Assembly (NCBI RefSeq): GCF_006345805.1
Contig: NW_021832808.1
Span: 1-32,315 of the forward strand
Length of the DNA stretch: 32,315 nucleotides
Source: Octopus sinensis
Lineage: Eukaryota
Direction: 5' to 3'
Position numbers and translations under genes: made by a program. The notes under the pieces were generated by a model, which was not told the origin of the DNA, did no database searches, and saw only the letters and a program-made list of their open reading frames with translations. The first letter of the stretch is position 1. The number at the start of each line of letters is the position of its first letter. Below are positions 2,711 to 32,315 of the stretch, one piece after another.

Positions 2711-2842
2711 ACTTGTTTAAACTGATTTCAGTCTTACTGGGGTTATGAAAGAAAAAAAAAACGTCCCTGGTCTTTGAATGTTATACGGAGTTGAGCTTAT
2801 GTGGAATGCTAGTCGTTCAATTCTGTTGTATTGACACTTATT
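2711..2842 (+). repeat. Left copy of ~131-bp direct duplication flanking a SINE
   Basis: acttgtttaaactg...gacacttatt recurs at 3229-3359 with one 1-bp indel and one substitution. Confidence 0.95.
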
Positions 2843-3228
2843 GGCGGAGGCGCAATGGCCCAGTGGTTAGGGCAGCGGACTCGCGGTCATAGGATCGCGG
2901 TTTCGATTCCCAGACCGGGCGTTGTGAGTGCTTATTGAGCGAAAACACCTAAAGCTCCACGAGGCTCCGGCAGGGGATGGTGGTGATCCCTGCTGTACTC
3001 TTTCACCACAACTTTCTCTCACTCTTACTTCCTGTTTCTGTTGTACCTGTATTTCAAAGGGCCGGCCTTGTCACTCTCTGTGTCACGCTGAATATCCCCG
3101 AGAACTACGTTAACGGTACACGTGTCTGTGGAGTGCTCAGCCACTTACACGTTAATTTCACGAGCAGGCTGTTCCGTTGATTCGGATCAACCGGAACCCT
3201 CATCATCGTAACCGACGGAGTGCTTCCC
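2843..3228 (+). mobile_element. SINE family C, full length
   Basis: tRNA-like head with A box TGGCCCAGTGG and B-box-like GGTTTCGATTCC; near-identical to 7796-8185. Confidence 0.9.
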
Positions 3229-3685: not shown

Positions 3686-3715
<30 letters not shown>

Positions 3716-3725
3716 TGTATGTATG

Positions 3726-3759
<34 letters not shown>

Positions 3760-3911
3760 TGTATGTATGTATGAATGTATGTATGTATGTATGTATGTAT
3801 GTATGTATGTATGTATGTATGTATGAATGTATGTATGTATGTATGTATGTATGTATGAATGTATGTATGTGTATGTATGTATGTATGTATGTATGTATGT
3901 ATGTATGTATG

Positions 3912-3945
<34 letters not shown>

Positions 3946-4385
3946 TGTATGAATGTATGTATGTATGTATGTATGTATGTATGTATGTATGTGTGTGTAC
4001 ATGTATGTATGTATGTATGTATGTATGAATGTATGTATGTATGTATGTATGTATGTATGTATGTATGTATGTATGTATGTATGTATATATGTATGTATGT
4101 ATGTATGTATATATGTATGTATGAATGTATGTATGTATGTATGTATGTATGTATGTATGTATGTATGTATGTGTTTGTGTGTGTGTATGTATGTATGTAT
4201 GTATGTATGTATATATGTATGTATGTATGTATGTATATATGTATGTATGAATGTATGTATGTATGTATGTATGTATGTATGTATGTATGTATGTATGTAT
4301 ATATGTATGTATGTATGTATGTATATATGTATGTATGAATGTATGTATGTATGTATGTATGTATGTATGTATGTATGTATGTATG

Positions 4386-4417
<32 letters not shown>

Positions 4418-4431
4418 TGTATGTATGTATG

Positions 4432-4463
<32 letters not shown>

Positions 4464-4945
4464 TGTATGAATGTATGTATGTATGTATGTATGTATGTAT
4501 GTATGTGTGTGTGTACATGTATGTATGTATGTATGTATGTATGAATGTATGTATGTATGTATGTATGTATGTATGTATGTATGAATGTATGTATGTATGT
4601 ATGTATCTGTTTGTGTGTGTGTGTATGTATGTATGTATGTATGTATGTATGTATGTATGTATGTATGTATGTATGTATGTATGAATGTATGTATGAATAT
4701 GTGTATGTATGTATGAATGTATGTATGTATGTATGTATCTGTTTGTGTGTGTGTGTATGTATGTATGTATGTATGTATGTATGTATGTATGTATGTATGT
4801 ATGAATGTATGTATGTATGAATATGTGTATGTATGTATGAATGTATGTATGAATATGTGTATGTATGTATGTATGTATGTATGAATGCATGTGTTTGTGT
4901 GTGTTTATGTATGTATGTATGTATGTAGGTAGGTAGGTAGGTATA
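3686..4945. repeat. ~1.26-kb (ATGT)n tetranucleotide array with ATGA/ATAT/GT variants, ending in (GTAG)n
   Basis: Direct reading. Confidence 0.97.
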
Positions 4946-4969
4946 TGTCTATATTTATGTATCAATCAA

Positions 4970-5006: not shown

Positions 5007-5040
5007 ATATCTATCTATCAATCTATCTATCTATCTATTT
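4970..5040. repeat. (CTAT)n microsatellite
   Basis: Direct reading. Confidence 0.9.
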
Positions 5041-5043
5041 ATT

Positions 5044-5261
5044 TATTCTTTTACTTGTTTCAGTCATTTGACTGCAGCCATGCTGGAGCACAGCTTTTTG
5101 TCGAACAAATCGACCCCACGACTTCTTCTTTTTAAGTCTGGTACTTATTCTATCGGTCGATTTTGCCGAACTGCTCAGTTATCAAGCGATGGGAGGTGAA
5201 CAAACACAGACACACAAATATGTATATATATATATATATGTATACACACACACAACACACA

Positions 5262-5298
<37 letters not shown>

Positions 5299-5449
5299 CA
5301 TATATACAATGGGCTTCTTTCAGTTTCCGTTTATCAAATCCACTCACAGGCTATAGTAGAAGACTCTTGCCCAAGGTGCCACGCAGTGGGAGTGAACCCA
5401 GAACGATGTGGTTGGGAAGCAAGCTACTTACCACACACCCACACCTGGG

Positions 5450-5452
<3 letters not shown>
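5044..5452 (-). mobile_element. SINE family A with internal TA/CA microsatellite
   Basis: Minus strand has a tRNA-like head (tggtaagtagcttgcttcccaaccacatcgttctgggttcactcccactgcgtggcaccttgggcaag), a CORE-like ccttgggcaag segment, an internal microsatellite and the family A 3' end. Confidence 0.85.
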
Positions 5453-5486
<34 letters not shown>

Positions 5487-5802
5487 TATATATTTTACAT
5501 ATATATATATATATATATCAATGTCTATCCTGATTTTCGTTTAAGTCTTCGTATTAGTATTAGCTGAGTAGTTTTGCTTCATTTATAATATACGCACGTG
5601 CTTGCTCGCTTGTGAGGAAGAATGTGCTGTGTGTGCGAGCGTATGTGCGTGGACGTACACAGAGAGAAAGAGAGACAGAGAAAGTGAGACAGACACAGAG
5701 GGAAGGAGATAGGAGTGAGCAAGAGAGAGGAGAGAAATAGTTATAGAAATGAATTTGTTTTCAAATATGACTTAGTATTAACTACATTATATATCATTAG
5801 AA

Positions 5803-7395: not shown

Positions 7396-7795
7396 ATGTG
7401 GTTGGTGAATAATGGAGTTTAACGCCGCTTCTCCCCGTTACTTATTTGCCGTAACGTTGCTTTGTTTAAAATCACACATAGTAAATTGTCCAGGTGCTTC
7501 TTCAATACTCCGTGTAGATTTCCACATTTCTTTAGCAAGATATAAATTTGTAGGCCGGTGAACCTTAGGCCACTGCAGTATGATTTTTGATGAGGGTGAG
7601 GGCCTTCAGGACTATGTACTTACGGCCAGTTCGGGATATTGTATAGCTTTCAATAGTGAAGTTTGGTTCGAGCCATTCAAAGAAAGGATCTGTTTATAGA
7701 CTACTGCATATTTTTCCTGTCTTCTCGTCAGAGATTAGGGCTTTAATACTTTCAGCCTCTCCCAGCTGCTTAGCTGTGTTGTACTGGGACATCTT

Positions 7796-8185
7796 GTGGA
7801 GGCGCAATGGCCCAGTGGTTAGGGCAGCAGACTCGCGGTCATAGGATCGCGGTTTCGATTCCCACACCGGGCGTTGTGAGTGTTTATTGAGCGAAAACAC
7901 CTAAAAGTTCCACGAGGCTCCGGCAGGGGATGGTGGTGATCCCTGCTGTACTCTTTCACCACAACTTTCTCTCACTCTTACTTCCTGTTTCTGTTGTACC
8001 TGTATTTCAAAGGGCCGGCCTTGTCACTCTCTGTGTCGCGCTGAATATCCCCGAGAACTACGTTAACGGTACACGTGTCTGTGGAGTGCTCAGCCACTTA
8101 CACGTTAATTTCACGAGCAGGCTGTTCCGTTGATCGGATCAACCGGAACCCTCGTTGTCGTAACCGACGAAGTGCTTCCACCACC
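7796..8185 (+). mobile_element. SINE family C, full length, inserted in the LINE
   Basis: Near-identical to 2843-3228; (CCA)n tail; 13-bp TSD actgggacatctt at 7783-7795 and 8186-8198. Confidence 0.92.
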
Positions 8186-11588: not shown

Positions 11589-11741
11589 GTTTGCTGCTCG
11601 TCTGCTACAGTTTGCACTGTGCATATCGTCTGCTGCAGTTTGCACTGTGCGTATCGTCTGCTGCAGTTTGTACTGTGCGTATCGTCTGCTGCAGTTTGCA
11701 CTGTGCGTATCGTTTGCTTCAGTTTGCACTGTGCGTATCGT
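11589..11741. repeat. 28-bp minisatellite (agtttgcactgtgcgtatcgtctgctgc), about 5 units
   Basis: Unit starts at 11609, 11637, 11665, 11693, 11721, plus a degenerate unit at 11589. Confidence 0.9.
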
Positions 11742-14740: not shown

Positions 14741-14753
14741 CTATTATACATAC

Positions 14754-14811
<58 letters not shown>

Positions 14812-14814
<3 letters not shown>

Positions 14815-14970
14815 GACAGGCTTCTTTCTGTTTCCGTCGGCCAAAGCCGCTCATGAGGCTTGGTCGGCCCGAATCTATAGCAGAAAACACTTGCCCAAGG
14901 TGGCGTGCAGTGAATATGAATCCGGAACCATGTGGTTCGTAAGCAAGCTTCTTACCACACAGCCACGCCT
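14812..14970 (-). mobile_element. SINE family A, 5' half
   Basis: Matches 24185-24330 and 5310-5452. Confidence 0.8.
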
Positions 14971-14992
14971 GATATGTTTATGTTTGTGCGTA

Positions 14993-15068
<76 letters not shown>

Positions 15069-16309: not shown

Positions 16310-16347
<38 letters not shown>

Positions 16348-16433
16348 TATTTGAGACAAAACCACTATTTTGCAAAACAAACAAGGAAAGACTTAATCAA
16401 TACATAAAATTTAATAAATAGTCAAAAAAACCG

Positions 16434-16476
16434 CCACTACAATCGTTTCTTGTCTTGATCGACAATCTTCAGGTGG
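16434..16476 (-). ncRNA. Minimal type I hammerhead ribozyme (left-arm copy)
   Basis: Exact reverse complement of 20215-20257. Confidence 0.8.
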
Positions 16477-17749
16477 ACTTCCAATCTAAAAAATCAAAAT
16501 TTTAAAATATAAAAATAATACTTTTAAATAATTAAAGTATAAATGAAAAAATATAAGTATATAATCCATATATAACCTATATATAATCCATATCGAAAAT
16601 ATAGACTAATTACCACGAATTCCCTAAAAAAACCCTACTAAAACAAAACTCTTAAAAACATATAACGATAAAATCTCCCTTTGCTAAACTCTATAACAAA
16701 CCTATAAAGTAAACCCCCTAACCTAAACATTCACACAAACAAATCACACCACGTAAACCACAGACTCACGACTTATACATACCTATACTAACATTATAAA
16801 CCTCAATATACACCAAACCCACTCCCCCCACACAGACAAATTAACCATACATCCCAAACCTAAATAACAAACCATATATACATTCCACACAAAACACACA
16901 CTCACACGCACCAAAACCCACTCCCTCCCCACACGACAAATTAACACATACATCCCAAACCTAAATAACAAACCCATATATACATCACACACAAAACACA
17001 CACTCACCGCCAAAAACACTCACACACAAAAGATACATATACTCCCTCACCATATACGCCTATACATACTCACTAAACTCGACATATACAACAATACTTA
17101 CACACCCACATAAAACATTATATACATTTATGAGCTTTAACTCACCTTAGCATCTCTAACAAACAACTTGCAGTAACCCATCCCATTCTCTATGCCTACC
17201 TCACTACTACACTATTCCATTCACATTCCAAACAACTCTAGTCCACCACCCGGTTATTCACGTGGAAAACGAGCACCACTCAAAAATTATGAATGAAACA
17301 ATGTAAAAAAATAACCAACACCTAAAATAGACAAAATACCACACAATTACCTAAAAAAACCATGATAAACCAAAACATAAAAGCATATAACGATAAAATC
17401 TCCCTTTGCTAAACCCTATAACAAACTTATATAGCAAATCCCCTAATCTAAAACATCACACACAAAAAACCACACGTAACCACAGACCCGAAGTTATACA
17501 CAAACCTATACTAACTTATAAACCTCTATACAAAAAAACCACTCCTCCCACACAGACCAATTAACACATACATCCCAATCCTAAATACAAAACCCAAATA
17601 CACATTCACACACAAAACACACACACACGCAAAACACACACACACAACAGATACATATGCTCCCTCACATATACCATATACAATACTCACTAAAACTCGA
17701 TATATACAACAATATTTACATCCACACTCATACAGATAAATAAATTATA

Positions 17750-18156
17750 ATATAAAAAAATAAAATTGTTCCAGATGATATTCTTTATAATATTAATAAG
17801 GCCTCTAAAGTAGTAATGTTAAAATATGAGTTGGATAATAAAACTGAACCTTATGTACCTTTGCACCCCAGAATTACTCTTAAAGACCATAAAGATAATT
17901 TTTATTCAGACCCTAAAGTTAGATTAATTTGCCCATGTAAATCGGACCTAGGTAAATTAAGTAAATTTATTTTAGATAAATATATTGATAAGTTAAATAA
18001 ACTTAATTATTTAAAATTATGGTTAGTAATAATAATACATTGAAATGGTTTATAATATAAAGATAAAAATCGTTATAAATTTATTCAAATATATAGATAA
18101 TTATTATTCTTCTATTAATGAAATTGTGTTTAATAAAGCGCTTATTTTCGCAACAA
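17750..18156 (+). pseudogene. Penelope-like reverse transcriptase N-terminal fragment
   Basis: RITLKDHKDNFYSDPKVRLICPCKSDLGKLSKFILD, then (frameshifted) LKWF..IKDK..KFIQ.-IDNYYSSINEIVFNKALIFA. Matches my recollection of the PLE RT pattern ITLKDHK.NF...PK.RLINP.KS..G..SK..LD...WF...F..FDI..FY.SI. Confidence 0.8.
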
Positions 18157-20214
18157 CAATAAATACATCGTAATTAACCAGAATATCAAAAATAACATTA
18201 TGACATAAGGATAAATCAAATACATACTTACAATTCAGTTACAAATTATAAAGTGAAATTAGATTATTAGCCGTTAAAAAACCAAACAAAATTACGTTAC
18301 CTTGGAAATAACTAATGTAAAAAAAGAATACGCGCCATAGAAAGTAAACGTCATTCATAGTATGAATGGAGAAATATAATAAATGGAACTAAAAACTATT
18401 TCCACGTAGCAAACCAACGCTACTTAAAAAAATTTATTATGAATGGATTCTTTAAAAACTATCATGAAAAATCAATTAAATACATTTATGAGCTTTAGCT
18501 CACCCTTATAACTCTAACAAACAACTTACAGTAACCCAAACTCAATGCCTACCTCATTACCACCCTAAAGGGTGGTAATGAGGTAGGCATTGAGTTGGGT
18601 TACTGTAAGTTGTTTGTTAGAGTTATAAGGGTGAGCTAAAGCTCATAAATGTATTTAATTGATTTTTCATGATAGTTTTTAAAGAATCCATTCATAATAA
18701 TTTTTTAAGTAGCGTTAGTTTGCTACGTGGAAATAGTTTTTAGTTCCATTTATTATATTTCTCCATTCATACTATGAATGACGTTTACTTTCTATGGCGC
18801 GTATTCTTTTTTTACATTAGTTATTTCCATGGTAACGTAATTTTGTTTGGTTTTTTAACGGCTAATAATCTAATTTCACTTCATAATTTGTAACTGAATT
18901 GTAAGTATGTATTTGATTTATCCTTATGTCATAATGTTATTTTTGATATTCTGGTTAATTACGATGTATTTATTGTTGTTTTCATAAGAGTGTTTATGTA
19001 TATGAGATTGGTTGTGAGTTTTTAATTGTATAATTAATTTATTTATCTGTATGAGTGTGGATGTAAATATTGTTGTATATATCGAGTTTTAGTGAGTATG
19101 TATATGCGTATGTGAGGGAGCATATGTATCTGTTGTGTGTGTGTGTTTTGCGTGTGTGTGTGTTTTGTGTGTGAATGTGTATTTGGGTTTGTTATTTAGG
19201 ATTTGGGATGTATGTGTTAATTTGTCTGTGTGGGGAGGGAGTGGTTTTTGGTGTATAGAGGTTTATAAGTTAGTATAGGTTTGTGTATAAGTCTTGGGTC
19301 TGTGGTTTACGTGTGGGTTTTTTGTGTGTGAATGTTTAGATTAGGGGGATTGCTATATAAGTTTGTTATAGGGTTTAGCAAAGGGAGATTTTATCGTTAT
19401 ATGCTTTTATGAGTTTTGGTTTATCATGGTTTTTTTAGGTAATTTGTGGTATTTTGTCTATTTTAGGTGTTGGTTATTTTTTTACATTGTTTCATTCATA
19501 ATTTTTGAGTGGTGCTCGTTTTGCCACGTGAATAACCGGGTGGTGGACTAGAGTTGTTTGGAATGTGAATGGAATAGTGTAGTAGTGAGGTAGGCATAGA
19601 GAATGGGATTGGGTTACTGCAAGTTGTTTGTTAGAGATGCTAAGGTGAGTTAAAGCTCATAAATGTATATAATGTTTTATGTGGGTGTGTAAGTATTGTT
19701 GTATATGTCGAGTTTAGTGAGTATGTATAGGCGTATATGTGAGGGAGTATATGTATCTTTTGTGTGTGAGTGTTTTGCGTGTGAGTGTGTGTTTTGTGTG
19801 TGAATGTATATATGGGTTTGTTATTTAGGTTTTGGGATGTATGTGTTAATTTGTCTGTGTGGGGAGGGAGTGGGTTTTGTTGTATATTGAGGTTTATAAG
19901 TTAGTATAGGTATGTGTATAAGTCGTGAGTCTGTGGTTTACGTGTGTGTATTTGTGTGTGAATGTTTAGGTTAGGGGGTTTACTTTATAGGTTTGTTATA
20001 GAGTTTAGCAAAGGGAGATTTTATCGTTATATGTTTTTAAGAGTTTTGTTTTATCAGGGTTTTTTTAGGGAATTCGTGGTAATTAGTCTATATTTTCGAT
20101 ATGGATTATATATAGGTTATATATGGATTATATACTTATATTTTTTCATTTATACTTTAATTATTTAAAAGTATTATTTTATATTTTAAAATTTTGATTT
20201 TTTAGATTGGAAGT

Positions 20215-20257
20215 CCACCTGAAGATTGTCGATCAAGACAAGAAACGATTGTAGTGG
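20215..20257 (+). ncRNA. Minimal type I hammerhead ribozyme (right-arm copy)
   Basis: ccac-CTGAAGA-ttgtc[gatcaa]gacaa-GAAA-c[gatt]g-TA-gtgg: stem I ccac/gtgg, core CUGANGA, 5-bp stem II, GAAA, quasi-palindromic stem III ACGATTGT, GUA cleavage triplet at 20251-20253. Confidence 0.82.
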
Positions 20258-20432
20258 CGGTTTTTTTGACTATTTATTAAATTTTATGTATTGATTAAGT
20301 CTTTCCTTGTTTGTTTTGCAAAATAGTGGTTTTGTCTCAAATAATATTTTATAATATTTTACTATAAAATTGGATTTATCCTAAATCTGATTTTTTTTCC
20401 CTGTAAATTTGGATATATTCCCTAATATTTAT

Positions 20433-20485
<53 letters not shown>

Positions 20486-20744
20486 CTATATATAAGAGAG
20501 AGAATTCGCGGAGAAACCTAATATCCGAACTAAAGATGAGGAACAAATGGGAGAGAAGGTTTACGAATCTAAGATGGACAGATAATCAAGTCCTACCTCT
20601 GGTCCCATGCTGTAGTGCTGACAGGGAAAGTGATGTGAGGGCAAATCGAAGTGAAGTTGATACCCCCGTCAACGATGCTATCTCTGATACCCCTTATTCT
20701 GCTTGTTCCCCACTCCCGCCCCTCAGACTTCACAGCTCAGCATC

Positions 20745-21420
20745 GTCTACAACACCAACTCGTGCTCCTTATTCCCAAAGTTCAGTGAACTATTTACACT
20801 GGCCATACATGACTCCCCTGATGTGATAGCTATCACCGAGACTTGGCTGACTCCAGCAGTAAAGGACTCAGAAATCCCCTGCAGGGCTACGTCCTTTTCA
20901 GATGTGACAGAGGAAAAAGGCGAGGTGGAGGTGTTGCTGTGTATGTTAAGTCTGAGCACAAACCGTCCAGCGGTATTCTACCCACTAATGCTCAACCTAC
21001 AACAAAATTCGATGCCGTCTATTGCAAGCTGAGCCTATCTGAGTTTTGCCTGCCCGTGTTGGCTGTCTACAGGCCGCCTCTTGCCGACCCCCAGGACGAT
21101 GCTCATTTACTCGAAGCGATAAGATTCGTTTCAGCTTCGCATGGTACTAGGAGACTTCAACGCTCCCACGATCGATTGGCCCGCATCAATTTGTACAACA
21201 TCTTCCCGTTTCGGCCCGGCCCTTCTTGACGTGGCTGAAGATTGTTTTCTATCGCAACATGTTGAATATCCGACAAGGCATCGGTCTGGGCAGCAGCCAT
21301 CTATGCTAGATCTGGTATTCTCCCGCTATCCAAGATCAGTGTCAGACGTATCTGTGTGCGCCCCTCTTGCCAAGAGTGATCATGCGGTCCTGAAGTTCGT
21401 CATGCACACAACTTTTTCTA
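20745..21420 (+). pseudogene. LINE ORF2 APE endonuclease, frameshifted
   Basis: DVIAITETWL, GYVLFRCDR..RGGGVAVYVK, AVYRPP, LGDFNAPTIDW, LDLVFS, SDH motifs across three frames. Confidence 0.9.
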
Positions 21421-21834
21421 CGCCCCGACTACTTCGCTGCCACGTAGAGTCTTCTCTGCAATTAATCTTGAAATTCTAACCGAGGCTTCCGCGCTTCTGG
21501 ACTGGTGATCCCTGATGACGTTGTCCTCTGTTGACGAACTATGGTCATCCCTCAAAGCATATGTAATCTTTTTGACTGACCAGGCAGTTCCCGTTGGGCT
21601 TCCCAAGAAGAAGAAACACAAGCCCTGGGTGACGAAGAAGGTTAAACGAGAACGTCGACTCAGAGATATTGCTTGGGCTGAATTCAAAAATCTGGATTCG
21701 ACTGCAGCTTTTGAGGTGTACAAAACTCAACGAGACCGAGCCGTGAAAATTGAAAAGAAAGAACGCTTCAGTTATGAATACAAAATCGCGGCAATCCAAA
21801 AACCTTCTTTGCCCATGTCCAGCGGAATTCCCGC

Positions 21835-23502
21835 TTGAACAACCAGATTGCAACGTTGGTAGACTCAACAGGCGTATCGATTGAGGACCCTTATCAACAG
21901 AGTCAATTATTTGCCGAGGCTTTTTCAACTATTTTCAAACAAGATGATGGTCGTGAACCCCCTCCATTTGATAGATCGGTACCTCCAATGCTTCGATTGG
22001 TCATCACGCGGGACGAAGTCAAACGTGTTATTCAAGGCCTCGATGTCAACAAGGGTCACGGCCCTGACGGTATACACCCACGGGTTATCAAAGCGTTGGC
22101 TCCGGTCATCTGCGAGCCCTTAACACGACTATTCAATATGTCATTGGCGACGGGTGTTATACCTGCAGACTGGAGAACAGCAATAATCTGCCCAATTTTC
22201 AAGAAAGGGAGCCGCGAAGACCCGCTTAACTACCGACCGGTTTCCTTTACATCAATAATCAGCAAGATGTTCGAAACCATCCTTAAGAAAAGTATGATGC
22301 TCCACCTCCTAAACACAGCCTCTATCTCTGATTCCCAACACGGCTTCGTGCCGAAGAGATCATGCTTGACCAACTTACTAGTAATGGAAGAATTGGTGAC
22401 GCGCATCCTCGATGATAGTGATGCTGTTGACATCGTTTTATTGGACTTTGCCAAAGCTTTTGACTCGGTAAACCACCGCCTATTACTTGTCAAGCTTCAA
22501 GCATATAGTTTCCATCCGGATATTATACGATGGGTTGGTGCCTTCCTCTCAGATCGCTCCTTCCAAGTCCAAGTAAATGGTTCGCGGTCCGACGTCTCCA
22601 GTGCGAGCAGTGGCGTGCCTCAAAGTTCAGTGCTTGGGCCCTTGTTGTTCTTAGTCTTCATAAATGACTTGCCCGACGACCTCACGCAACACACCCTTCT
22701 ATTTGCCGACGATATCAAACTGGTCGCTCCTCGCGGTAATATAGAGGATCTTCGTCGATGCCTCCACTAAATTTGGAAGTGGTCTAACGATTGGGACCTG
22801 TGTCTGAACGTGTCAAAGTGCTGTCATCTGCCTGTCGGCTCTACTCCTGCAACTCAACTTGATTTCGAGCCGGGTCGTCTGCTGCTGGAGAGGACCGATC
22901 AGGTAAAGGACCTGGGTATCTTGGTGGATTTCTCCTTTTCGCCTTCGGCCCAGTGCGTCCATGCTGCCAACAAAGCACGCGGAATTCTGTTCTTGATTCG
23001 ACGGTCATTCGGAATGCTCACAGCAGCCATATTCCTACCACTCTATGTCACGCTGGTGAGACCCATATTGGAGTATGGGATTCAAGCCTCTTCTCCTTAT
23101 CTCCTCAAAGACATACAGCATCTCGAAAGAGTCCAGAAGCTGGCTACCCGCATGGTTCATGGTCTCAAAAATTTGTCCTACGAAGAAAGGCTGAGGACGC
23201 TCGACCTTATTCTCTTGAAAAAACGCTGCCGCCGTGGTGATCTCATTCTCGCCCACAACATCATAAGCGGAAAGTGTAACCTCTCGAAAGAGCTGTTCTT
23301 CACTCCTGCTCCAGAGCGTCGGCTGCGGGGTCATTCCGAAAAGCTCTACCTGCGACGATTTCATCTCAATCGAAGGAGAGGAGCTTTCTTCCGTCCGGGT
23401 TGCGGATCCGTGGAACAAGCTGCCAGACGAGATGGTGAAGATGCCGACGACCGCTTTGTTCAAAGCCTCCCTGGACCTCAAGTGGCTGAACTCTTTACAT
23501 GA
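21835..23502 (+). pseudogene. LINE ORF2 reverse transcriptase and C-terminal domain
   Basis: KGHGPDGI, NYRPVS, QHGF, LDFAKAFDSV, SGVPQSSVLGPLLF, LFADDIKL. One in-frame TAA at 22768-22770 (reading continues in the same frame) and a frameshift near 23390. Confidence 0.93.
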
Positions 23503-23584: not shown

Positions 23585-23900
<316 letters not shown>

Positions 23901-23915
23901 ATTCTTTTATTATTT

Positions 23916-24092
23916 TATTCTTTATTTGTTTCAGTCATTTGACTGCGGTCATGCTAGAGTACTGCCTTTAGTCGAATAAATCGACCCCAGGACTTATATT
24001 CTTTTTAAGCCTAGTACTACTTCTACCGCTAAGTTACGGGAACATAAACACACCAATATCGGTTGTCGGACCAACACAGACACATACATATA

Positions 24093-24186
<94 letters not shown>

Positions 24187-24327
24187 CCGTCTACAAGATC
24201 CACTCACAAGGCTTTGATCGGCTCGAGGCTTTAGTAGAAGACTATTGCCCAAGGTTCCACGCAGTAGGACTGAACCCGGGACCATGTGGTTGGTAAGCAA
24301 GCTACTTACCACACAGCCACTCCTGCG

Positions 24328-24330
<3 letters not shown>
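23916..24330 (-). mobile_element. SINE family A, near full length, with internal (TA)n
   Basis: Head reverse complement aggcgcaggagtggctgtgtggtaagtagcttgc...gggttcagtcc; 3' end as at 1-84. Confidence 0.88.
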
Positions 24331-24385
<55 letters not shown>

Positions 24386-25024
24386 TAATAGTAAAAACTC
24401 TAGAGATGTTTGTGTGTATCCGAAATAGTATATTCTATCTGATTCTTTTCTTCTTTTTTTTTGCATATTTATTTTCATACTTACCATCGGCAGTGTGGTA
24501 CAAATGTTTGTAATATCTGGACCTCTATTTATTAATGAAAACGATTAAACACCAATGTTGACTGTTATTTCTTGCCGAAAAAGCCATGGCTTTCGTGATA
24601 TCAGCACACATATACACATACAGAATACACATACATATAATGAATGTCATGGCTTGTCAATCAACACAAACACACGCTATGCGTGACATACACACACATA
24701 GTCTTCACAATCTCTAATGAAAAAAAAAACGTCGAGTTTTTGACATACACAATATTTTAATCATTTAGGAATATTTTTAACTGAATCTGATTTCAAAGGT
24801 GTAAGCTGTTTGTACAATAAGTATTTATATTTTACCTTTCTTTAAACAGACAATATTTTAATGCTTTTTAAAATTATTTTCAAGTGAATGGCGATCTTTC
24901 GCGTGTCATCCAGAGTTCGTTCATTTCTGTAAAATTTTTTTTTTTATTTACTGAATAAATTTTAAACTGAAAGAGAGAAGAAAGTGAAAGATGTATGTAC
25001 GTGTATATGAAATGGACGTGTGCA

Positions 25025-25672: not shown

Positions 25673-25701
25673 CGTGACCCAACGGATCACGGGTAGTCTA
25701 G
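25673..25701 (+). mobile_element. Helitron-like 3' terminus
   Basis: CGTGACCC-AAC-GGATCACG hairpin (1 mismatch) followed 6 nt later by CTAG|T; a second CTAG at 25703-25706. 5' end not identified. Confidence 0.55.
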
Positions 25702-25706
25702 TCTAG

Positions 25707-25767
<61 letters not shown>

Positions 25768-25774
25768 ATATCTA

Positions 25775-25846
<72 letters not shown>

Positions 25847-25935
25847 ATATATAATATATATATACTCTTTTAACCCTTTTACTTGTTTTCAAAGAATGTC
25901 TGCTTCTTTGTCCGTAAAAATGAATTGAATTTCTA

Positions 25936-26432
25936 TGTGTTTGTTTGTTTGCCCGTCAAAATGAAAGTAAAGACACCAAATCCGTAGGGGTAGTCTTACC
26001 CTAGTTCAGATTCGAAACTGAATCTTTCAATTCACCTTGAGCATACGGCCTTTTCAAACGTCAAAAAGAACCGTGATAAATCGGTGTTCCACTTGACCTG
26101 TAGCCTCTTCAGTGCCATCGCAAGTTCACTCACATAATGAGTGACCTGGATTCGGTAAAGCTTATTATTCTATATGATAGTGTTTGTTTGTTTGATTGCT
26201 TGTTTGTTTGTATGTTTATCCGCCAAAATGAAAGCAAAGACTGCAAATCTGGAGGAGTTGTCTTACCCTGGCTCAGATTCGAAACTGAATCCTTAAATTC
26301 TCCTTGGGCATACGGCCTATTTAAACATGAAAAGGAACTGTGACAAATGAGTGTTCCACTTGACCAGTGGCCTTCTCCGTGCCATCGCACAGTCACCTGG
26401 ATTCGGTAAATTTATTGTTCTATGTGATATAG
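25936..26432 (+). repeat. Two diverged ~250-bp tandem copies (25936-26180, 26181-26432)
   Basis: Shared blocks caaaatgaaag, gtcttaccct.g.tcagattcgaaactgaatc, gcatacggcct, gtgttccacttgacc, gtgccatcgca, cctggattcggtaaa. Confidence 0.85.
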
Positions 26433-26778
26433 CTATTTTTCTAGCTTGTCAGTTCAGATATAAATATACAAACTTCTTTGAGATAGACCGAGATAATCCG
26501 ACATCAAAGCGGGACGCACGACACACACACAGAGAACTTGACAGGGAAAAGAAAAACATCGACAGATCCACAGAAAGACATTTCACATCAACAACATGCA
26601 TTCCGACTTACAGATCTGCTTCGCTTTAACTACCGCCTGCTACAGTTAAACTTCTCTTCCACACAACGCCTTGCCTTGCATTCCTGTAATATAGCGCCGA
26701 AATTCAGCGCTAACGCTGACTGGACACAGCATCTGTAATTTCATTTGACTATTTCATACTGATATTCTTAATCAAAAA

Positions 26779-27012
26779 ATGTCTCCTAAAAAAAGAGCGT
26801 CAAAAAGCGAACACCAAAGAAACCCACGAAGTGCAGCTGAAGATGAAGATGAGAGACGCGCACGGCTTGCAGATGGTCGACAAAGAGATAAAGCTCGACG
26901 TGTATCTGGAACTGAACATCAAAGAAATGCATGGTTTGCAGATAGCCAACACAGAATAGCAAGCTTGGTGTGCAGCAGAAAAGGAAGCATACAAAGTTCA
27001 AAGAATGCATAA
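26779..27012 (+). pseudogene. Disrupted ORF with basic NLS-like start and 23-aa STPR-like repeats (possible Helitron Rep-Hel N-terminus)
   Basis: MSPKKRASK; then EDEDERRARLADGRQRDKARRVS / GTEHQRNAWFADSQHRIA.., a 23-residue period fitting E-x-x-E-x-R-x-x-R-L. Confidence 0.55.
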
Positions 27013-30000
27013 CGTGCAGATAGCGAGCAGAGAATGGCAGCTCGATGTGCAGCAGAAATGGAATTTCAAAAAGTTCAAAGAATGCTCAACGTGCAGATAG
27101 CGAGCAGAGAATGGCAGCTCGATGTGCAGCAGAAAAGGAAGGTCAAAAAGTTCAAAGAATGCTCAACGTGCAGATAGCGAGCAGAGAATGGCAGTCCGAT
27201 GTGCAGCAGAAAAGGAAGGTCAAAAAGTTCAAAGAATGCTCAACGTGCAGATAGCGAGCAGAGAATGGCAGCTCGATGTGCAGCAGAAAAGGAAGGTCAA
27301 AAAGTTCAAAGAATGCTCAACGTGCAGATAGCGAGCAGAGAATGGCAGTCCGATGTGCAGCAGAAAAGGAAGGTCAAAAAGTTCAAAGAATGCTCAACGT
27401 GCAGATAGCGAGCAGAGAATGGCAGCTCGATGTGCAGCAGAAAAGGAAGGTCAAAAAGTTCAAAGAATGCTCAACGTGCAGATAGCGAGCAGAGAATGGC
27501 AGATAGATGTGCAGCAGAAAAGGAAGGTCAAAAAGTTCAAAGAATGCTCAACGTGCAGATAGCGAGCAGAGAATGGCAGATCGATGTGCAGCAGAAAAGG
27601 AAGTTCAAAAAGTTCAAAGAATGCTCAACGTGCAGATAGCGAGCAGAGAATGGCAGCTCGATGTGCAGCAGAAATGGAAGTTCAAAAAGTTCAAAGAATG
27701 CTCAACGTGCAGATAGCGAGCAGAGAATGGCAGTCCGATGTGCAGCAGAAAAGGAAGGTCAAAAAGTTCAAAGAATGCTCAACGTGCAGATAGCGAGCAG
27801 AGAATGGCAGATCGATGTGCAGCAGAAAAGGAAGGCCAAAAAGTTCAAAGAATGCTCAACGTGCAGATAGCGAGCAGAGAATGGCAGTCCGATGTGCAGC
27901 AGAAAAGGAAGGTCAAAAAGTTCAAAGAATGCTCAACGTGCAGATAGCGAGCAGAGAATGGCAGCTCGATGTGCAGCAGAAAAGGAAGTTCAAAAAGTTC
28001 AAAGAATGCTCAACGTGCAGATAGCGAGCAGAGAATGGCAGCTCGATGTGCAGCAGAAAAGGAGTTCAAAAAGTTCAAAGAATGCTCAACGTGCAGATAG
28101 CGAGCAGAGAATGGCAGCTCGATGTGCAGCAGAAAAGGAAGTTCAAAAAGTTCAAAGAATGCTCAACGTGCAGATAGCGAGCAGAGAATGGCAGCTCGAT
28201 GTGCAGCAGAAATGGAAGTTCAAAAAGTTCAAAGAATGCTCAACGTGCAGATAGCGAGCAGAGAATGGCAGCTCGATTTGCAGCAGAAATGGAAGTTCAA
28301 AAAGTTCAAAGAATGCTCAACGTGCAGATAGCGAGCAGAGAATGGCAGTCCGATGTGCAGCAGAAAAGGAAGGTCAAAAAGTTCAAAGAATGCTCAACGT
28401 GCAGATAGCGAGCAGAGAATGGCAGTCCGATGTGCAGCAGAAAAGGAAGGTCAAAAAGTTCAAAGAATGCTCAACGTGCAGATAGCGAGCAGAGAATGGC
28501 AGATCGATGTGCAGCAGAAAAGGAAGGTCAAAAAGTTCAAAGAATGCTCAACGTGCAGATAGCCAACAGAGAATGGCAGCTCGATGTGCAGCAGAAAAGG
28601 AAGTTCAAAAAGTTCAAAGAATGCTCAACGTGCAGATAGCGAGCAGAGAATGGCAGCTCGATGTGCAGCAGAAAAGGAAGGTCAAAAAGTTCAAAGAATG
28701 CTCAACGTGCAGATAGCGAGCAGAGAATGGCAGCTCGATGTGCAGCAGAAAAGGAAGTTCAAAAAGTTCAAAGAATGCTCAACGTGCAGATAGCGAGCAG
28801 AGAATGGCAGCTCGATGTGCAGCAGAAAAGGAAGTTCAAAAAGTTCAAAGAATGCTCAACGTGCAGATAGCGAGCAGAGAATGGCAGCTCGATGTGCAGC
28901 AGAAAAGGAAGTTCAAAAAGTTCAAAGAATGCTCAACGTGCAGATAGCGAGCAGAGAATGGCAGCTCGATGTGCAGCAGAAATGGAAGTTCAAAAAGTTC
29001 AAAGAATGCTCAACGTGCAGATAGCGAGCAGAGAATGGCAGCTCGATTTGCAGCAGAAAAGGAAGTTCAAAAAGTTCAAAGAATGCTCAACGTGCAGATA
29101 GCGAGCAGAGAATGGCAGTCCGATGTGCAGCAGAAAAGGAAGGTCAAAAAGTTCAAAGAATGCTCAACGTGCAGATAGCGAGCAGAGAATGGCAGTCGAT
29201 GTGCCAGAAAAGGAAGTTCAAAAAGTTCAAAGAATGCTCAACGTGCAGATAGCGAGCAGAGAATGGCAGATCGATGTGCAGCAGAAAAGGAAGGTCAAAA
29301 AGTTCAAAGAATGCTCAACGTGCAGATAGCGAACAGAGAATGGCAGCTCGATGTGCAGCAGAAAAGGAAGTTCAAAAAGTTCAAAGAATGCTCAACGTGC
29401 AGATAGCGAGCAGAGAATGGCAGCTCGATGTGCAGCAGAAAAGGAAGGTCAAAAAGTTCAAAGAATGCTCAACGTGCAGATAGCGAGCAGAGAATGGCAG
29501 CTCGATGTGCAGCAGAAAAGGAAGTTCAAAAAGTTCAAAGAATGCTCAACGTGCAGATAGCGAGCAGAGAATGGCAGCTCGATGTGCAGCAGAAAAGGAA
29601 GGTCAAAAAGTTCAAAGAATGCTCAACGTGCAGATAGCGAGCAGAGAATGGCAGTCCGATGTGCAGCAGAAAAGGAAGTTCAAAAAGTTCAAAGAATGCT
29701 CAACGTGCAGATAGCGAGCAGAGAATGGCAGCTCGATGTGCAGCAGAAAAGGAAGTTCAAAAAGTTCAAAGAATGCTCAACGTGCAGATAGCGAGCAGAG
29801 AATAGCAGCTCGATGTGCTGCAGAAAAGGAAGGTCAAAAAGTTCAAAGAATGCTCAACGTGCAGATAGCGAGCAGAGAATGGCAGCTCGATGTGCATGAG
29901 AAATGGAAGTTCAAAAAGTTCAAAGAATGTACAACTTGCAGATATCGAGCAGAGAACGGCAGTCCGATGTGCAGCAGAAAAGGAAGTTCAAAAAGTTCAA

Positions 30001-32315
30001 AGAATGCTCAACGTGCAGATAGCGAGCAGAGAATAGCAGCTCGATGTGCTGCAGAAAAGGAAGGTCAAAAAGTTCAAAGAATGCTCAACGTGCAGATAGC
30101 GAGCAGAGAATAGCAGCTCGATGTGCTGCAGAAAAGGAAGGTCAAAAAGTTCAAAGAATGCTCGACGTGCAGATAGCGAGCAGAGAATGGCAGTCCGATG
30201 TGCAGCAGAAAAGGAAGTTCAAAAAGTTCAAAGAATGCTCAACGTGCAGATAGCGAGCAGAGAATGGCAGCTCGATGTGCAGCAGAAATGGAAGTTCAAA
30301 AAGTTCAAAGAATGCTCAACGTGCAGATAGCGAGCAGAGAATGGCAGTCCGATGTGCAGCAGAAAAGGAAGTTCAAAAAGTTCAAAGAATGCTCAACGTG
30401 CAGATAGCGAGCAGAGAATGGCAGCTCGATGTGCAGCAGAAAAGGAAGGTCAAAAAGTTCAAAGAATGCTCAGCGTGCAGATAGCGAGCAGAGAATGGCA
30501 GATCGATGTGCAGCAGAAAAGGAAGTTCAAAAAGTTCAAAGAATGCTCAACGTGCAGATAGCGAGCAGAGAATGGCAGTCCGATGTGCAGCAGAAAAGGA
30601 AGGTCAAAAAGTGCAAAGAATGCTCAACGTGCAGATAGCGAGCGGAGAATGGCAGTCCGATGTGCAGCAGAAAAGGAAGGTCAAAAAGTTCAAAGAATGC
30701 TCAACGTGCAGATAGCGAGCGGAGAATGGCAGTCCGATGTGCAGCAGAAGAGGAAGGTCAAAAAGTTCAAAGAATGCTCAACGTGCAGATAGCGAGCAGA
30801 GAATGGCAGATCGATGTGCAGCAGAAAAGGAAGTTCAAAAAGTTCAAAGAATGCTCAACGTGCAGATAGCGAGCAGAGAATGGCAGCTCGATGTGCAGCA
30901 GAAATGGAAGTTCAAAAAGTTCAAAGAATGCTCAACGTGCAGATAGCGAGCAGAGAATGGCAGCTCGATGTGCAGCAGAAAAGGAAGGTCAAAAAGTTCA
31001 AAGAATGCTCAACGTGCAGATAGCGAGCAGAGAATGGCAGCTCGATGTGCAGCAGAAAAGGAAGGTCAAAAAGTTCAAAGAATGCTCAACGTGCAGATAG
31101 CGAGCAGAGAATGGCAGCTCGATGTGCAGCAGAAATGGAAGTTCAAAAAGTTCAAAGAATGCTCAACGTGCAGATAGCGAGCAGAGAATGGCAGCTCGAT
31201 GTGCAGCAGAAAAGGAAGGTCAAAAAGTTCAAAGAATGCTCAACGTGCAGATAGCGAGCAGAGAATGGCAGCTCGATGTGCAGCAGAAAAGGAAGGTCAA
31301 AAAGTTCAAAGAATGCTCAACGTGCAGATAGCCAACAGAGAATGGCAGCTCGATGTGCAGCAGAAAAGGAAGTTCAAAAAGTTCAAAGAATGCTCAACGT
31401 GCAGATAGCGAGCAGAGAATGGCAGCTCGATGTGCAGCAGAAAGGAAGGTCAAAAAGTTCAAGAATGCTCACGTGCAGATAGCGAGCAGAGAATGGCAGC
31501 TTGATGTGCAGCAGAAAGGAAGTTCAAAAAGTTCAAAGAATGCTCAACGTGCAGATAGCGAGCAGAGAATGGCAGCTCGATGTGCAGCAGAAAAGGAGGT
31601 CAAAAAGTTCAAAGAATGCTCAACGTGCAGATAGCGAGCAGAGAATGGCAGCTCGATGTGCAGCAGAAAAGGAAGTTCAAAAAGTTCAAAGAATGCTCAA
31701 CGTGCAGATAGCCAACAGAGAATGGCAGCTCGATGTGCAGCAGAAAAGGAAGGTCAAAAAGTTCAAAGAATGCTCAACGTGCAGATAGCGAGCAGAGAAT
31801 GGCAGCTCGATGTGCAGCAGAAAAGGAAGGTCAAAAAGTTCAAAGAATGCTCAACGTGCAGATAGCGAGCAGAGAATGGCAGATCGATGTGCAGCAGAAA
31901 AGGAAGGTCAAAAAGTTCAAAGAATGCTCAACGTGCAGATAGCGAGCAGAGAATGGCAGCTCGATGTGCAGCAGAAAAGGAAGTTCAAAAAGTTCAAAGA
32001 ATGCTCAACGTGCAGATAGCGAGCAGAGAATGGCAGCTCGATGTGCAGCAGAAAAGGAAGGTCAAAAAGTTCAAAGAATGCTCAACGTGCAGATAGCGAG
32101 CAGAGAATGGCAGCTCGATGTGCAGCAGAAAGGAAGGTTCAAAAGTTCAAAGAATGCTCAACGTGCAGATAGCGAGCGGAGAATGGCAGTCCGATGTGCA
32201 GCAGAAGAGGAAGGTCAAAAAGTTCAAAGAATGCTCAACGTGCAGATAGCGAGCGGAGAATGGCAGTCCGATGTGCAGCAGAAGAGGAAGGTCAAAAAGT
32301 TCAAAGAATGCTCAA
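26970..32315 (+). repeat. 77-bp tandem satellite, ~69 units, open-ended at the window edge
   Basis: Unit gtgcagcagaaaaggaag(g/t)tcaaaaagttcaaagaatgctcaacgtgcagatagcgagcagagaatggcagctcgat; the ORF track repeats every 77 bp. Confidence 0.98.

What the first reader, a model, noticed from the sequence alone, without database searches (positions are those of the whole stretch)
26779..32315. Satellite born from a 23-aa STPR-like coding repeat
The ORF's 69-bp repeat (gaa cat caa aga aat gca tgg ttt gca gat agc caa cac aga ata gca) aligns directly to the satellite unit (gaa gtt caa aga -at gct caa cgt gca gat agc gag cag aga atg gca). The 77-bp unit equals the 69-bp codon repeat plus a 9-bp duplication (aaagttcaa) minus one A. 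Some units keep ancestral-looking alleles (agccaacag at ~28562, ~31330, ~31690; agaatagca at ~29799, ~30030, ~30107). STPR is the 23-residue DNA-binding repeat of silkworm FMBP-1, also found at Helitron transposase N-termini (established). The ancestor-to-satellite transition is visible in situ at 26900-27050.
Basis: partly seen in the sequence, partly recalled or inferred. Interest (0 to 1): 0.85.

Follow-up and report, generated by a model that had tools for sequence, protein, structure and literature searches.

The report
Satellite array born inside Helitron gene
A 5.4-kb block of 77-base tandem repeats grew out of a short repeated coding stretch at the start of a dead Helitron transposon gene, giving an unusually clear example of a known process in which mobile elements seed satellite DNA.

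Summary
A 77-bp tandem array (about 70 units, 96% matches) runs from 26937 to the window end. It abuts a 77-codon ORF (26779-27012) whose own repeats are spaced 69 bp.

A full HMMER search found one relative. It is a 1.1-kb Logan contig (L001) matching window 26751-26980: leader, ATG and three repeats (176/234, E 4e-43). L001 has no array. It continues into a decayed reading frame collinear with residues 119-349 of the Helraiser Helitron transposase (score 137; 400 shuffles 36.6±4.7).

So the ORF is the 5' end of a Helitron transposase gene, and the satellite is derived from it. The unit core is 85% identical to L001's third repeat. The unit equals one 69-bp period plus a 9-bp duplication minus one A, and no gene repeat in either copy carries these changes.

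"STPR-like" is fair but unproven. Pfam STPRs is the only or top hit for the ORF and for most L001 translations tried, always below threshold (12.7-26.8 bits, cut-off 27). The idealised satellite peptide does not match.

The array is non-coding. Its genome-wide abundance, right boundary and host organism could not be tested. Transposon-derived satellites are known, so this is a new variant of a known kind.

The parts
26751..26778 (+). Leader just upstream of the ATG, homologous to the relative L001 (nt 34-63). Homology between the two copies begins here.
   Evidence: blastn window 26751-26980 vs L001 34-252: 176/234 identical, E 4e-43.
26779..27012 (+). Truncated ORF of 77 codons, the 5' end of a dead Helitron transposase gene. 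It has a basic N-terminus (MSPKKRAS), then repeats R1-R3, and then reads out of frame into the first array unit to a TAA at 27010-27012.
   Evidence: ORF list. One database relative, P0121, at E 3.5e-06 in 1.84 billion proteins. Pfam STPRs is the only hit: 13.2 bits, E 0.13, below the cut-off of 27.
26803..26838 (+). R1, a half repeat of 12 codons (KSEHQRNPRSAA).
   Evidence: Read directly from the sequence. L001 has the matching partial repeat 107 nt before its R3 (D1).
26839..26907 (+). R2, a full 69-nt repeat of 23 codons (EDEDERRARLADGRQRDKARRVS). It has Glu1, Arg6, Arg9, Leu10 and Arg20 in STPR numbering.
   Evidence: 69-nt spacing to R3 (D3). 42/68 in-register matches to the satellite unit against shuffles of 19.0±3.6. 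STPR residue definitions are from PMC4856987.
26908..26977 (+). R3, 69 nt plus one extra A at 26961/26962 that shifts the frame (GTEHQRNAWFADSQHRIA|AWCAA). This is the last gene repeat. Its second half already aligns with the array unit.
   Evidence: 86% identical to L001 R3 and 75% to the restored satellite unit. Local alignment z = 10.5.
26978..27054 (+). First 77-nt period in repeat phase. It contains the 9-bp insert (26990-26998), the 1-nt loss after 27004 (AGAAAT to AGAAT) and a TAA.
   Evidence: Read directly from the sequence. TRF unit 0 (26937-27014), which overlaps it, has 13 differences from the consensus against 0-7 for the interior units.
26937..32315 (+). 77-bp tandem array of about 70 units, cut by the window end. 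It is non-coding, purine-rich on the + strand (69% A+G) and has no higher-order periodicity.
   Evidence: TRF. Unit table. One TAG per 231 nt, so most ORFs are 69 aa and the longest is 125 aa. Mean pairwise difference 3.9% with no dip at any lag.

Best explanation
The window holds the 5' end of a dead copy of a Helitron transposon. The transposase gene begins with a short basic N-terminus and three to four tandem 23-codon (69-bp) arginine-rich helical repeats of the STPR type.

In this copy one 69-bp period acquired a 9-bp tandem duplication and lost one A, which gave a 77-bp unit that no longer keeps the reading frame. That unit was then amplified to at least 70 copies and homogenised. The likely mechanism is unequal exchange or replication slippage between neighbouring repeats. 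The pre-existing tandem coding repeat supplied the homology that started the process.

The array is now ordinary non-coding satellite-like DNA with no evidence of function. The transposase is destroyed.

Shown: the array; the 69 to 78 to 77 transition; homology of the gene repeats to the unit; an unexpanded relative that continues into a Helitron N-terminal domain; and the polarity of the two indels.

Inferred: the amplification mechanism; a possible hybrid origin of the unit (first ten codons from R4, last thirteen from R3); and DNA binding by the repeats.
For: 1. TRF finds an array of 70 units at 96% matches.
2. Spacing goes 69, then 78, then 77.
3. R2 and R3 match the unit in the codon register at 42/68 and 51/68 positions, far above shuffles.
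4. The only relative among 1.84 billion representative proteins is P0121 (E 3.5e-06), on the Logan contig L001.
5. blastn of window 26751-26980 against L001 34-252 gives 176/234, E 4e-43. A satellite unit against L001 R3 gives 52/61 (85%), E 6e-15.
6. L001 has repeats spaced 69 nt and no tandem array.
7. L001 nt 449-1076 aligns, allowing frameshifts, to Helraiser residues 119-349 (sequence verified against PDB 7LCC). The score is 137, against 36.6±4.7 (maximum 59) for 400 shuffles and 39 for the reverse strand. There are 54 identical and 105 positive of 207 aligned pairs, with 3 frameshifts and 1 stop.
8. Pfam STPRs is the only or top hit for the ORF and for every L001 variant but one, the full-length frame-1 translation with X at stops, which gave no hit. 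Scores are 12.7-26.8 bits. None of 7 composition-matched shuffles hit it.
9. Two of L001's in-frame TGA codons fall at STPR positions 9 and 20, where Arg is conserved. The satellite has CGA at position 20.
10. The HELIANO survey finds STPRs stably associated with canonical Helitrons (PMC11417382).
11. The array is non-coding: the period is not a multiple of 3 and there is a TAG every 231 nt.
Against: - The window ends inside the array, so no Helitron Rep or helicase sequence is seen in this copy. No Helitron termini were identified either.
- L001 comes from an unidentified sample and is itself decayed. A word-indexed search and a PDB phmmer search with its translation found nothing. The Helitron link therefore rests on my own frameshift-tolerant alignment to one reference protein.
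- The STPR profile score never reaches Pfam's cut-off. The full-length frame-1 translation of L001 with X at stops gave no Pfam hit at all, and the idealised satellite peptide does not hit it.
- The satellite consensus is slightly closer to L001 R3 (81%) than to the adjacent window R3 (75%). The founder may therefore not be the neighbouring repeat as it now stands.
- Abundance elsewhere in the genome is unknown.
Confidence: 0.85

Rival explanations
1. Same origin, different amplification mechanism. The array was built by aberrant Helitron rolling-circle replication, which over-amplifies 5' segments, rather than by unequal exchange or slippage between neighbouring coding repeats.
For: Reviews describe rolling-circle tandemisation of truncated Helitrons, preferential amplification of 5' parts, and 'intermediate' arrays flanked by Helitron parts on one side only (PMC12628747). 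Here the array sits at the 5' end and Helitron sequence is seen on one side only.
Against: The repeated unit is one internal 69-bp period, not a truncated element with a 5' terminus. No Helitron end or hairpin recurs in the units. The monomer dimer shows no special single-strand fold (z = -0.49). The period equals the pre-existing repeat spacing, as expected for out-of-register exchange.
Confidence: 0.15
2. The direction is reversed. A pre-existing 77-bp satellite was captured by a Helitron and became part of its 5' coding region.
For: Helitrons are known to capture host sequences, including tandem repeats (PMC12628747).
Against: All gene repeats (R2 and R3 in the window; R3 and R4 in L001) share the in-frame 69-nt period, lack the 9-bp insert and keep the A. 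They give a consistent STPRs profile signal, whereas the satellite-derived peptide does not. STPRs occur in Helitrons of many species.
Confidence: 0.04
3. The ORF is not a gene remnant at all. It is only decayed edge units of the satellite that happen to stay open.
For: Array edges are typically the most diverged. Unit 0 has 13 differences from the consensus. R1 and R2 taken alone align only modestly to the unit (z about 3).
Against: The spacing upstream is 69, not 77. The region, including 28 nt of leader and the ATG, is homologous to a contig that has no array and goes on to encode a Helitron N-terminal domain.
Confidence: 0.03
4. The ORF is the first exon of a host STPR transcription-factor gene (of the FMBP-1 or ZNF821 type) rather than of a transposon, and that host gene's repeat expanded.
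For: STPR domains occur in host transcription factors across animals (PMC4856987). No Rep or helicase is visible in the window.
Against: About 82% of aligned bases are identical, leader included, with a copy that continues without interruption into a region collinear with Helraiser 119-349. There is no detectable pairwise similarity to the solved BmSTPR chains.
Confidence: 0.04
5. The array is an assembly artefact.
For: Tandem arrays at sequence ends are error-prone. The window ends within the array.
Against: The units carry structured, recurring variants (for example TC, A or T at fixed columns, and the shared CCAACA allele) and a graded edge. They are not identical copies.
Confidence: 0.03

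Closest known systems
Satellite DNAs that arise by expansion of internal tandem repeats of Helitron or Helentron elements (Drosophila DINE-TR1 central tandem repeats; Crassostrea gigas Cg170/HindIII and other Helentron-borne arrays)
   Same: The monomer is homologous to an internal segment of a rolling-circle transposon. The array is flanked by element sequence on at least one side, as in the 'intermediate form' described in PMC12628747. The array is homogenised and non-coding.
   Different: Those cases involve non-coding central repeats of non-autonomous elements. Here the seed is an in-frame peptide-coding repeat inside the transposase gene of an autonomous-type element, and the frame-breaking steps (+9, -1) can be read at the junction.
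Satellites derived from transposon coding regions (L1 ORF2 to PROsat and Pvc20; CR1 ORF2 to chicken HinfI repeat; CACTA Tnp2 transposase to CficCl-61-40; gag to rye E3900), as tabulated in PMC9659126
   Same: A piece of a transposon ORF became the monomer of a tandem array.
   Different: In those cases a unique ORF segment was tandemised afresh. Here the ORF already contained a tandem repeat with the same period, which gives a direct route by out-of-register exchange.
STPR DNA-binding repeats (Bombyx FMBP-1, human ZNF821; Pfam PF21107), also recorded in canonical Helitrons by HELIANO (PMC11417382)
   Same: The period is 23 residues, and the repeats are basic and predicted all-helical. Glu1, Thr/Ser2, Arg6, Arg9, Leu10 and Arg20 are partly present. 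STPRs is the only or top Pfam hit for the ORF and for most L001 translations tried.
   Different: Scores stay below Pfam's cut-off (12.7-26.8 bits against 27). There is no pairwise match to solved BmSTPR chains. DNA binding is untested.
Helraiser (reconstructed bat Helitron transposase, PDB 7LCC)
   Same: The relative L001 is collinear with Helraiser residues 119-349, including the CC-x-GK zinc-finger-like motif.
   Different: Only 26% identity. Helraiser's own basic N-terminus (residues 1-100) shows no similarity to these repeats beyond composition and gives no Pfam STPRs hit.

Membership tests
STPR repeat domain (Pfam PF21107) | Tandem repeats of strictly 23 residues | tested here: met
   R2 to R3 spacing is 69 nt in the window (D3). 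R2 to R3 and R3 to R4 spacings are 69 nt in L001. The definition is from PMC4856987. The satellite itself has a 77-nt period and does not meet this.
STPR repeat domain (Pfam PF21107) | Profile score at or above Pfam's gathering threshold (27 bits) | tested here: not met
   Window ORF 13.2 bits; frame-corrected ORF 13.9; P0121 12.7; L001 (from ETRIE) with X at stops 12.8; L001 with Arg at the TGA codons 17.4; repaired L001 plus repeat 1, 26.8. The full-length L001 frame-1 translation with X at stops gave no hit. STPRs was the only or top family wherever there was a hit, and 0 of 7 shuffles hit it. The idealised satellite peptide gave no hit.
STPR repeat domain (Pfam PF21107) | Conserved Glu1, Thr/Ser2 and Arg9 in each repeat | tested here: inconclusive
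   R1: K1, S2, R9. R2: E1, D2, R9. R3 in the window: G1, T2, W9. R3 in L001: E1, T2 and TGA at position 9. Satellite unit: E1, K2, Q9 with R10. Read from the sequence using the numbering of PMC4856987.
STPR repeat domain (Pfam PF21107) | Binds the DNA major groove as tandem helices | not testable with these tools
   AlphaFold2 on the single sequence gives one long helix over residues 19-60 (mean pLDDT 78.9). This is compatible but not discriminating.
Helitron (canonical, HLE1) transposase gene | N-terminal zinc-finger-like region collinear with a reference Helitron transposase | tested here: met
   Met in the relative L001, not in the window itself. Helraiser 119-349 against L001 449-1076 scores 137, against 36.6±4.7 for shuffles. 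The window shares only the part upstream of this region.
Helitron (canonical, HLE1) transposase gene | Rep (HUH) nuclease and PIF1-like helicase domains | not testable with these tools
   The window ends in the array and L001 ends before the Rep domain. tblastn of Helraiser 1-349 against the window found nothing significant.
Helitron (canonical, HLE1) transposase gene | 5'-TC and 3'-CTRR termini with a subterminal hairpin, inserted between A and T | tested here: inconclusive
   Homology between the two copies starts sharply 28 nt upstream of the ATG (window 26751). No TC terminus is evident there, and two copies are too few to decide.
Satellite DNA | Long head-to-tail array of near-identical monomers, non-coding | tested here: met
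   70 units over at least 5.4 kb at 96% matches. Mean pairwise difference 3.9%. Stop codons are present and the period is not a multiple of 3.
Satellite DNA | High genomic abundance or multiple arrays, typically heterochromatic | not testable with these tools
   No eukaryotic genome collection is on hand. Exact-pattern scans of metagenome, prokaryotic-genome and viral contigs found 0 matches.
Transposon-derived satellite (expansion of an internal repeat) | Monomer homologous to an internal element segment, with polarity from element to satellite | tested here: met
   Unit against L001 R3: 52/61, E 6e-15. The restored unit is 81% identical to L001 R3 and 75% to window R3. The +9 and -1 changes are found only in the array.

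The most novel reading that the evidence does not exclude
The coding repeat for a transposase's DNA-binding domain may be a recurrent seed of satellites. The 77-mer could be a major, possibly heterochromatic or centromeric, satellite of this genome, or could be spread by this Helitron family. Other STPR-bearing Helitron families might have spawned satellites in the same way. A further speculative link: the STPR-type domain favours 4-bp AT-rich repeats such as (ATAC)n and (ATAG)n, which abound in this window, so it could tie the element to microsatellite-rich regions.
Probability: 0.15. Interest if true: 0.7.

Novelty: new variant of a known kind. Interest (0 to 1): 0.5.

Why it matters
Satellite DNAs are known to arise from transposons, but the first steps are rarely visible.

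Here the whole path can be read at one junction:
- an in-frame 69-bp peptide-coding repeat;
- two small indels that break the frame and set a 77-bp period;
- amplification to at least 70 homogenised copies.

An unexpanded relative serves as an outgroup and fixes the direction of change.

The case shows that tandem peptide repeats inside a transposase gene, and not only non-coding internal repeats or termini, can seed a satellite. It also yields a concrete, testable prediction for the far end of the array.

It is a single locus in an unidentified animal genome. Its weight depends on how abundant the 77-mer is elsewhere.

Tried and rejected
Searches and tests that led nowhere:
1. A word-indexed protein search with the 77-aa ORF found no hit.
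2. Exact look-ups of the ORF and of the commonest 69-aa array ORF found nothing on record.
3. Exact DNA scans for the satellite core and for a family-specific R3 pattern found 0 hits in metagenome, prokaryotic-genome and viral contigs.
4. The reverse transcriptase of the neighbouring CR1-like LINE was searched to identify the host. The best hits are only 48-53% identical and taxonomically scattered, so the host remains unknown.
5. Literature searches for the monomer string and for the run accession found nothing relevant.
6. The last word-indexed search, with the conceptual L001 translation, returned nothing at E ≤ 0.001. In hindsight the threshold was too strict for a decayed pseudogene.
7. 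A PDB phmmer search with the same translation found nothing, and Pfam found nothing for the L001 zinc-finger region. I therefore wrote a frameshift-tolerant alignment against Helraiser, which gave the decisive result.
8. A PDB phmmer search with the repeats gave no match to BmSTPR.
9. Helraiser's own N-terminal basic region, compared with the repeats, shows nothing beyond composition, and it gives no Pfam STPRs hit.
10. No tRNA or Rfam family is present in the window.
11. The single-strand fold of the monomer dimer is not unusual (z = -0.49).
12. No higher-order repeat structure was found in the array.
13. AlphaFold2 on the 61-residue ORF gives one long helix, which is uninformative, so no fold search was run.
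14. No supplement text is held for the HELIANO paper.

Ideas rejected:
- The array as an expanded in-frame protein domain. The period is 77 and there is a TAG every 231 nt.
- AATAGC as an ancestral allele. The outgroup has AATGGC.

Full report
**What is there**

The window is animal-type genomic DNA, very rich in microsatellites, with a decayed CR1-like LINE at about 20.5-23.5 kb.

From 26937 to the window end (32315) TRF reports a single array. It has period 77, 70.0 copies, 96% matches and no indels. Cutting it at a fixed anchor gives 77-nt spacing in 60 of 68 intervals.

The first unit differs from the consensus at 13 of 78 columns, the second at 3, and the rest at 0-7. Mean pairwise difference among interior units is 3.9%, with no higher-order periodicity.

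The + strand is 69% purine. The period is not a multiple of three and one frame carries a TAG. Reading frames are therefore broken every 231 nt. Most ORFs are 69 aa and the longest is 125 aa. The array is non-coding.

**The ORF and the transition**

Directly upstream lies an ATG-initiated ORF at 26779-27012 (77 aa). Read in 23-codon phase it contains:
- a basic N-terminus, MSPKKRAS;
- a half repeat R1 (26803-26838);
- a full repeat R2 (26839-26907, EDEDERRARLADGRQRDKARRVS);
- a repeat R3 (26908-26977, GTEHQRNAWFADSQHRIA-AWCAA), which carries one extra A at 26961/26962.

The repeat finder independently reports a family at 26857, 26926 and 27004 with spacing 69 and then 78, after which the spacing is 77.

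R2 lies entirely outside the TRF array. It matches the satellite unit at 42 of 68 ungapped positions in the codon register. Shuffles give 19.0±3.6, and the best register of 3000 shuffles reaches 37 at most. R3 matches at 51 of 68.

The unit equals one 69-nt period plus a 9-nt tandem copy (GKTCAAAAA|GTTCAAAGA, 7-8 of 9 identical) minus one A (AGAAAT to AGAAT).

**An unexpanded relative**

The word-indexed search with the ORF found nothing. A full HMMER scan of 1.84 billion representative proteins found exactly one relative, P0121 (E 3.5e-06, 59% identity). It lies on a 1119-nt Logan contig from run SRR11869391 (L001).

The gene caller had read TGA as Trp. In the standard code the contig is a pseudogene with three in-frame TGA codons and a 2-nt indel.

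blastn aligns window 26751-26980 to L001 34-252 at 176/234 identical, E 4e-43. The alignment covers 28 nt of leader, the ATG, and R1 to R3. A satellite unit (window 26998-27057) aligns to L001's R3 at 52/61 (85%), E 6e-15.

L001 has its repeats spaced 69 nt apart (R2 to R3, and R3 to R4) and has no tandem array. After R4 it does not enter a satellite.

**The relative is a Helitron**

Pfam, a PDB phmmer search and my last word-indexed search found nothing for the downstream translation of L001.

I recognised a CC-x-GK motif typical of Helitron N-termini. To test it, I verified the first 349 residues of Helraiser against PDB 7LCC chain A. I then ran a frameshift-tolerant protein-to-DNA local alignment of my own.

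Helraiser residues 119-349 align collinearly to L001 nt 449-1076 with score 137. The 400 composition-preserving shuffles gave 36.6±4.7 (maximum 59), and the reverse strand gave 39. There are 54 identical and 105 positive of 207 aligned pairs, with three frameshifts and one stop. Plain tblastn sees only the zinc-finger-like block (E 0.095).

So L001 is the decayed 5' part of a Helitron transposase gene. By homology, the window ORF is the same gene's 5' end in another copy.

**Direction of change**

Every gene repeat in both copies (window R2 and R3; L001 R3 and R4) has the in-frame 69-nt period, lacks the 9-nt insert and keeps the A. All array periods, including the first (26978-27054), carry both changes. 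The satellite state is therefore derived.

With the insert removed, the unit shows these identities:

| Compared with | Identity |
|---|---|
| L001 R3 | 81% |
| Window R3 | 75% |
| Window R2 | 62% |
| L001 R4 | 47% |

The unit's last 13 codons are R3-like: 87% and 85% to the two R3 copies, against 33% to R4. Its first 10 codons are ambiguous: 72% to L001 R3 and 66% to L001 R4. They share the CAA-CGT/CTT signature at codons 9-10 with R4 and R1.

This fits, without proving, an out-of-register exchange between R3 and R4. Such an exchange would create a hybrid repeat that then became the array period. It predicts the second half of R4 and the rest of the gene at the far end of the array.

The CCAACA allele in three interior units is shared with window R3 and L001, so it is ancestral. 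The AATAGC allele is not supported as ancestral, because L001 has AATGGC.

**Is it STPR?**

STPRs are defined as strictly 23-residue basic repeats with conserved Glu1, Thr/Ser2 and Arg9. In FMBP-1, Arg6, Leu10 and Arg20 also contact DNA (PMC4856987).

The period is met. R2 has E1, R6, R9, L10 and R20. L001 R3 has E1, T2, Q5 and R6, with TGA exactly at positions 9 and 20. The satellite has CGA at position 20, which fits CpG decay of Arg codons in L001.

Pfam STPRs (PF21107) was the only or top hit wherever a hit was found:

| Sequence tested | Bits | E-value |
|---|---|---|
| Window ORF | 13.2 | 0.13 |
| Frame-corrected window ORF | 13.9 | 0.073 |
| P0121 as called | 12.7 | 0.18 |
| L001 frame 1 from ETRIE, X at stops | 12.8 | 0.17 |
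| L001 frame 1 from ETRIE, Arg at the TGA codons | 17.4 | 0.0059 |
| Conceptually repaired L001 including repeat 1 | 26.8 | 7e-06 |

The cut-off is 27 bits. None of seven composition-matched shuffles hit STPRs.

Against membership:
- the cut-off is never reached;
- the full-length L001 frame-1 translation with X at stops gave no Pfam hit;
- the idealised satellite peptide gives no STPR hit;
- no pairwise match to solved STPR chains exists.

The HELIANO survey reports STPRs as a domain stably associated with canonical Helitrons (PMC11417382). That fits the context. I therefore call the repeats STPR-like, not proven STPR.

**How it most likely came about**

A tandem coding repeat offers ready-made out-of-register homology. 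After the +9 and -1 changes, the founding 77-nt period was amplified and homogenised by unequal exchange or slippage. This destroyed the transposase.

Rolling-circle tandemisation, which is described for Helitrons (PMC12628747), is a possible alternative for the amplification step. It is less well fitted because the unit is an internal period without element termini.

Reverse capture of a satellite, a spurious ORF made of decayed edge units, a host STPR gene, and an assembly artefact are each disfavoured by the evidence above.

**Novelty**

Satellites derived from transposons are well documented. They include Helitron internal repeats and pieces of transposon ORFs (PMC12628747, PMC9659126).

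Two things are new here. The seed is an in-frame peptide repeat of a transposase gene. The transition is also preserved at the junction, with an outgroup to polarise it. I rate this a new variant of a known kind and of moderate interest.

**Limits**

- The host organism is unknown.
- The right boundary of the array and its genome-wide abundance could not be examined.
- The Helitron link rests on one short, decayed relative and one reference protein.

Noticed in passing
window 16333-17757 and 19026-20357: A 1.4-kb inverted repeat, 96-97% identical, with internal 101-bp and C/A-rich subrepeats. It flanks a 1.3-kb centre that holds a 75-aa ORF (17816-18043). It looks like a foldback or long-terminal-inverted-repeat element.
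   Followed up: no
window ~20500-23500: A decayed CR1-like LINE. The reverse transcriptase domain scores RVT_1 E 2.4e-24 and is split over several ORFs. The best database relatives are only 48-53% identical and come from scattered animal taxa, so the host genome is not represented in the collections.
   Followed up: partly
window 3686-4962, 23598-23902, 25680-25866: Very long 4-bp microsatellites: (TATG) about 322 copies, (ATAG) about 76 copies, and (TCTA)n(TA)n 0.9 kb upstream of the ORF. These are the same motifs, (atac)n, (atag)n and (tata)n, that the FMBP-1 STPR domain binds best (PMC4856987). This is probably coincidence in a microsatellite-rich genome.
   Followed up: no
window 25925-26129 and 26192-26396: A 267-bp tandem duplication at 80-83% identity, each copy preceded by a (GTTT)n stretch, directly upstream of the ORF leader. 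There are no other copies in the window.
   Followed up: no
window 5039-5517, 14745-15035, 23910-24390; also 2824-3227 and 7777-8179: Dispersed SINE-like repeat families at 75-96% identity, often next to (TA)n runs. ARAGORN detects no tRNA-like head.
   Followed up: no
L001 118-120, 205-207, 238-240: The database protein P0121 was predicted with TGA read as Trp. In the standard code these are stop codons. Two of them sit at STPR positions 9 and 20, where Arg is conserved, which suggests CGA to TGA decay at methylated CpG.
   Followed up: partly
window 26751 / L001 34: Homology between the two Helitron copies begins abruptly only 28 nt upstream of the ATG. No canonical 5'-TC terminus is evident, so it is unclear whether this is an element end, a truncation or an assembly break.
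   Followed up: partly
window 11598-11741: A 28-bp minisatellite with 5 copies at 94% matches.
   Followed up: no
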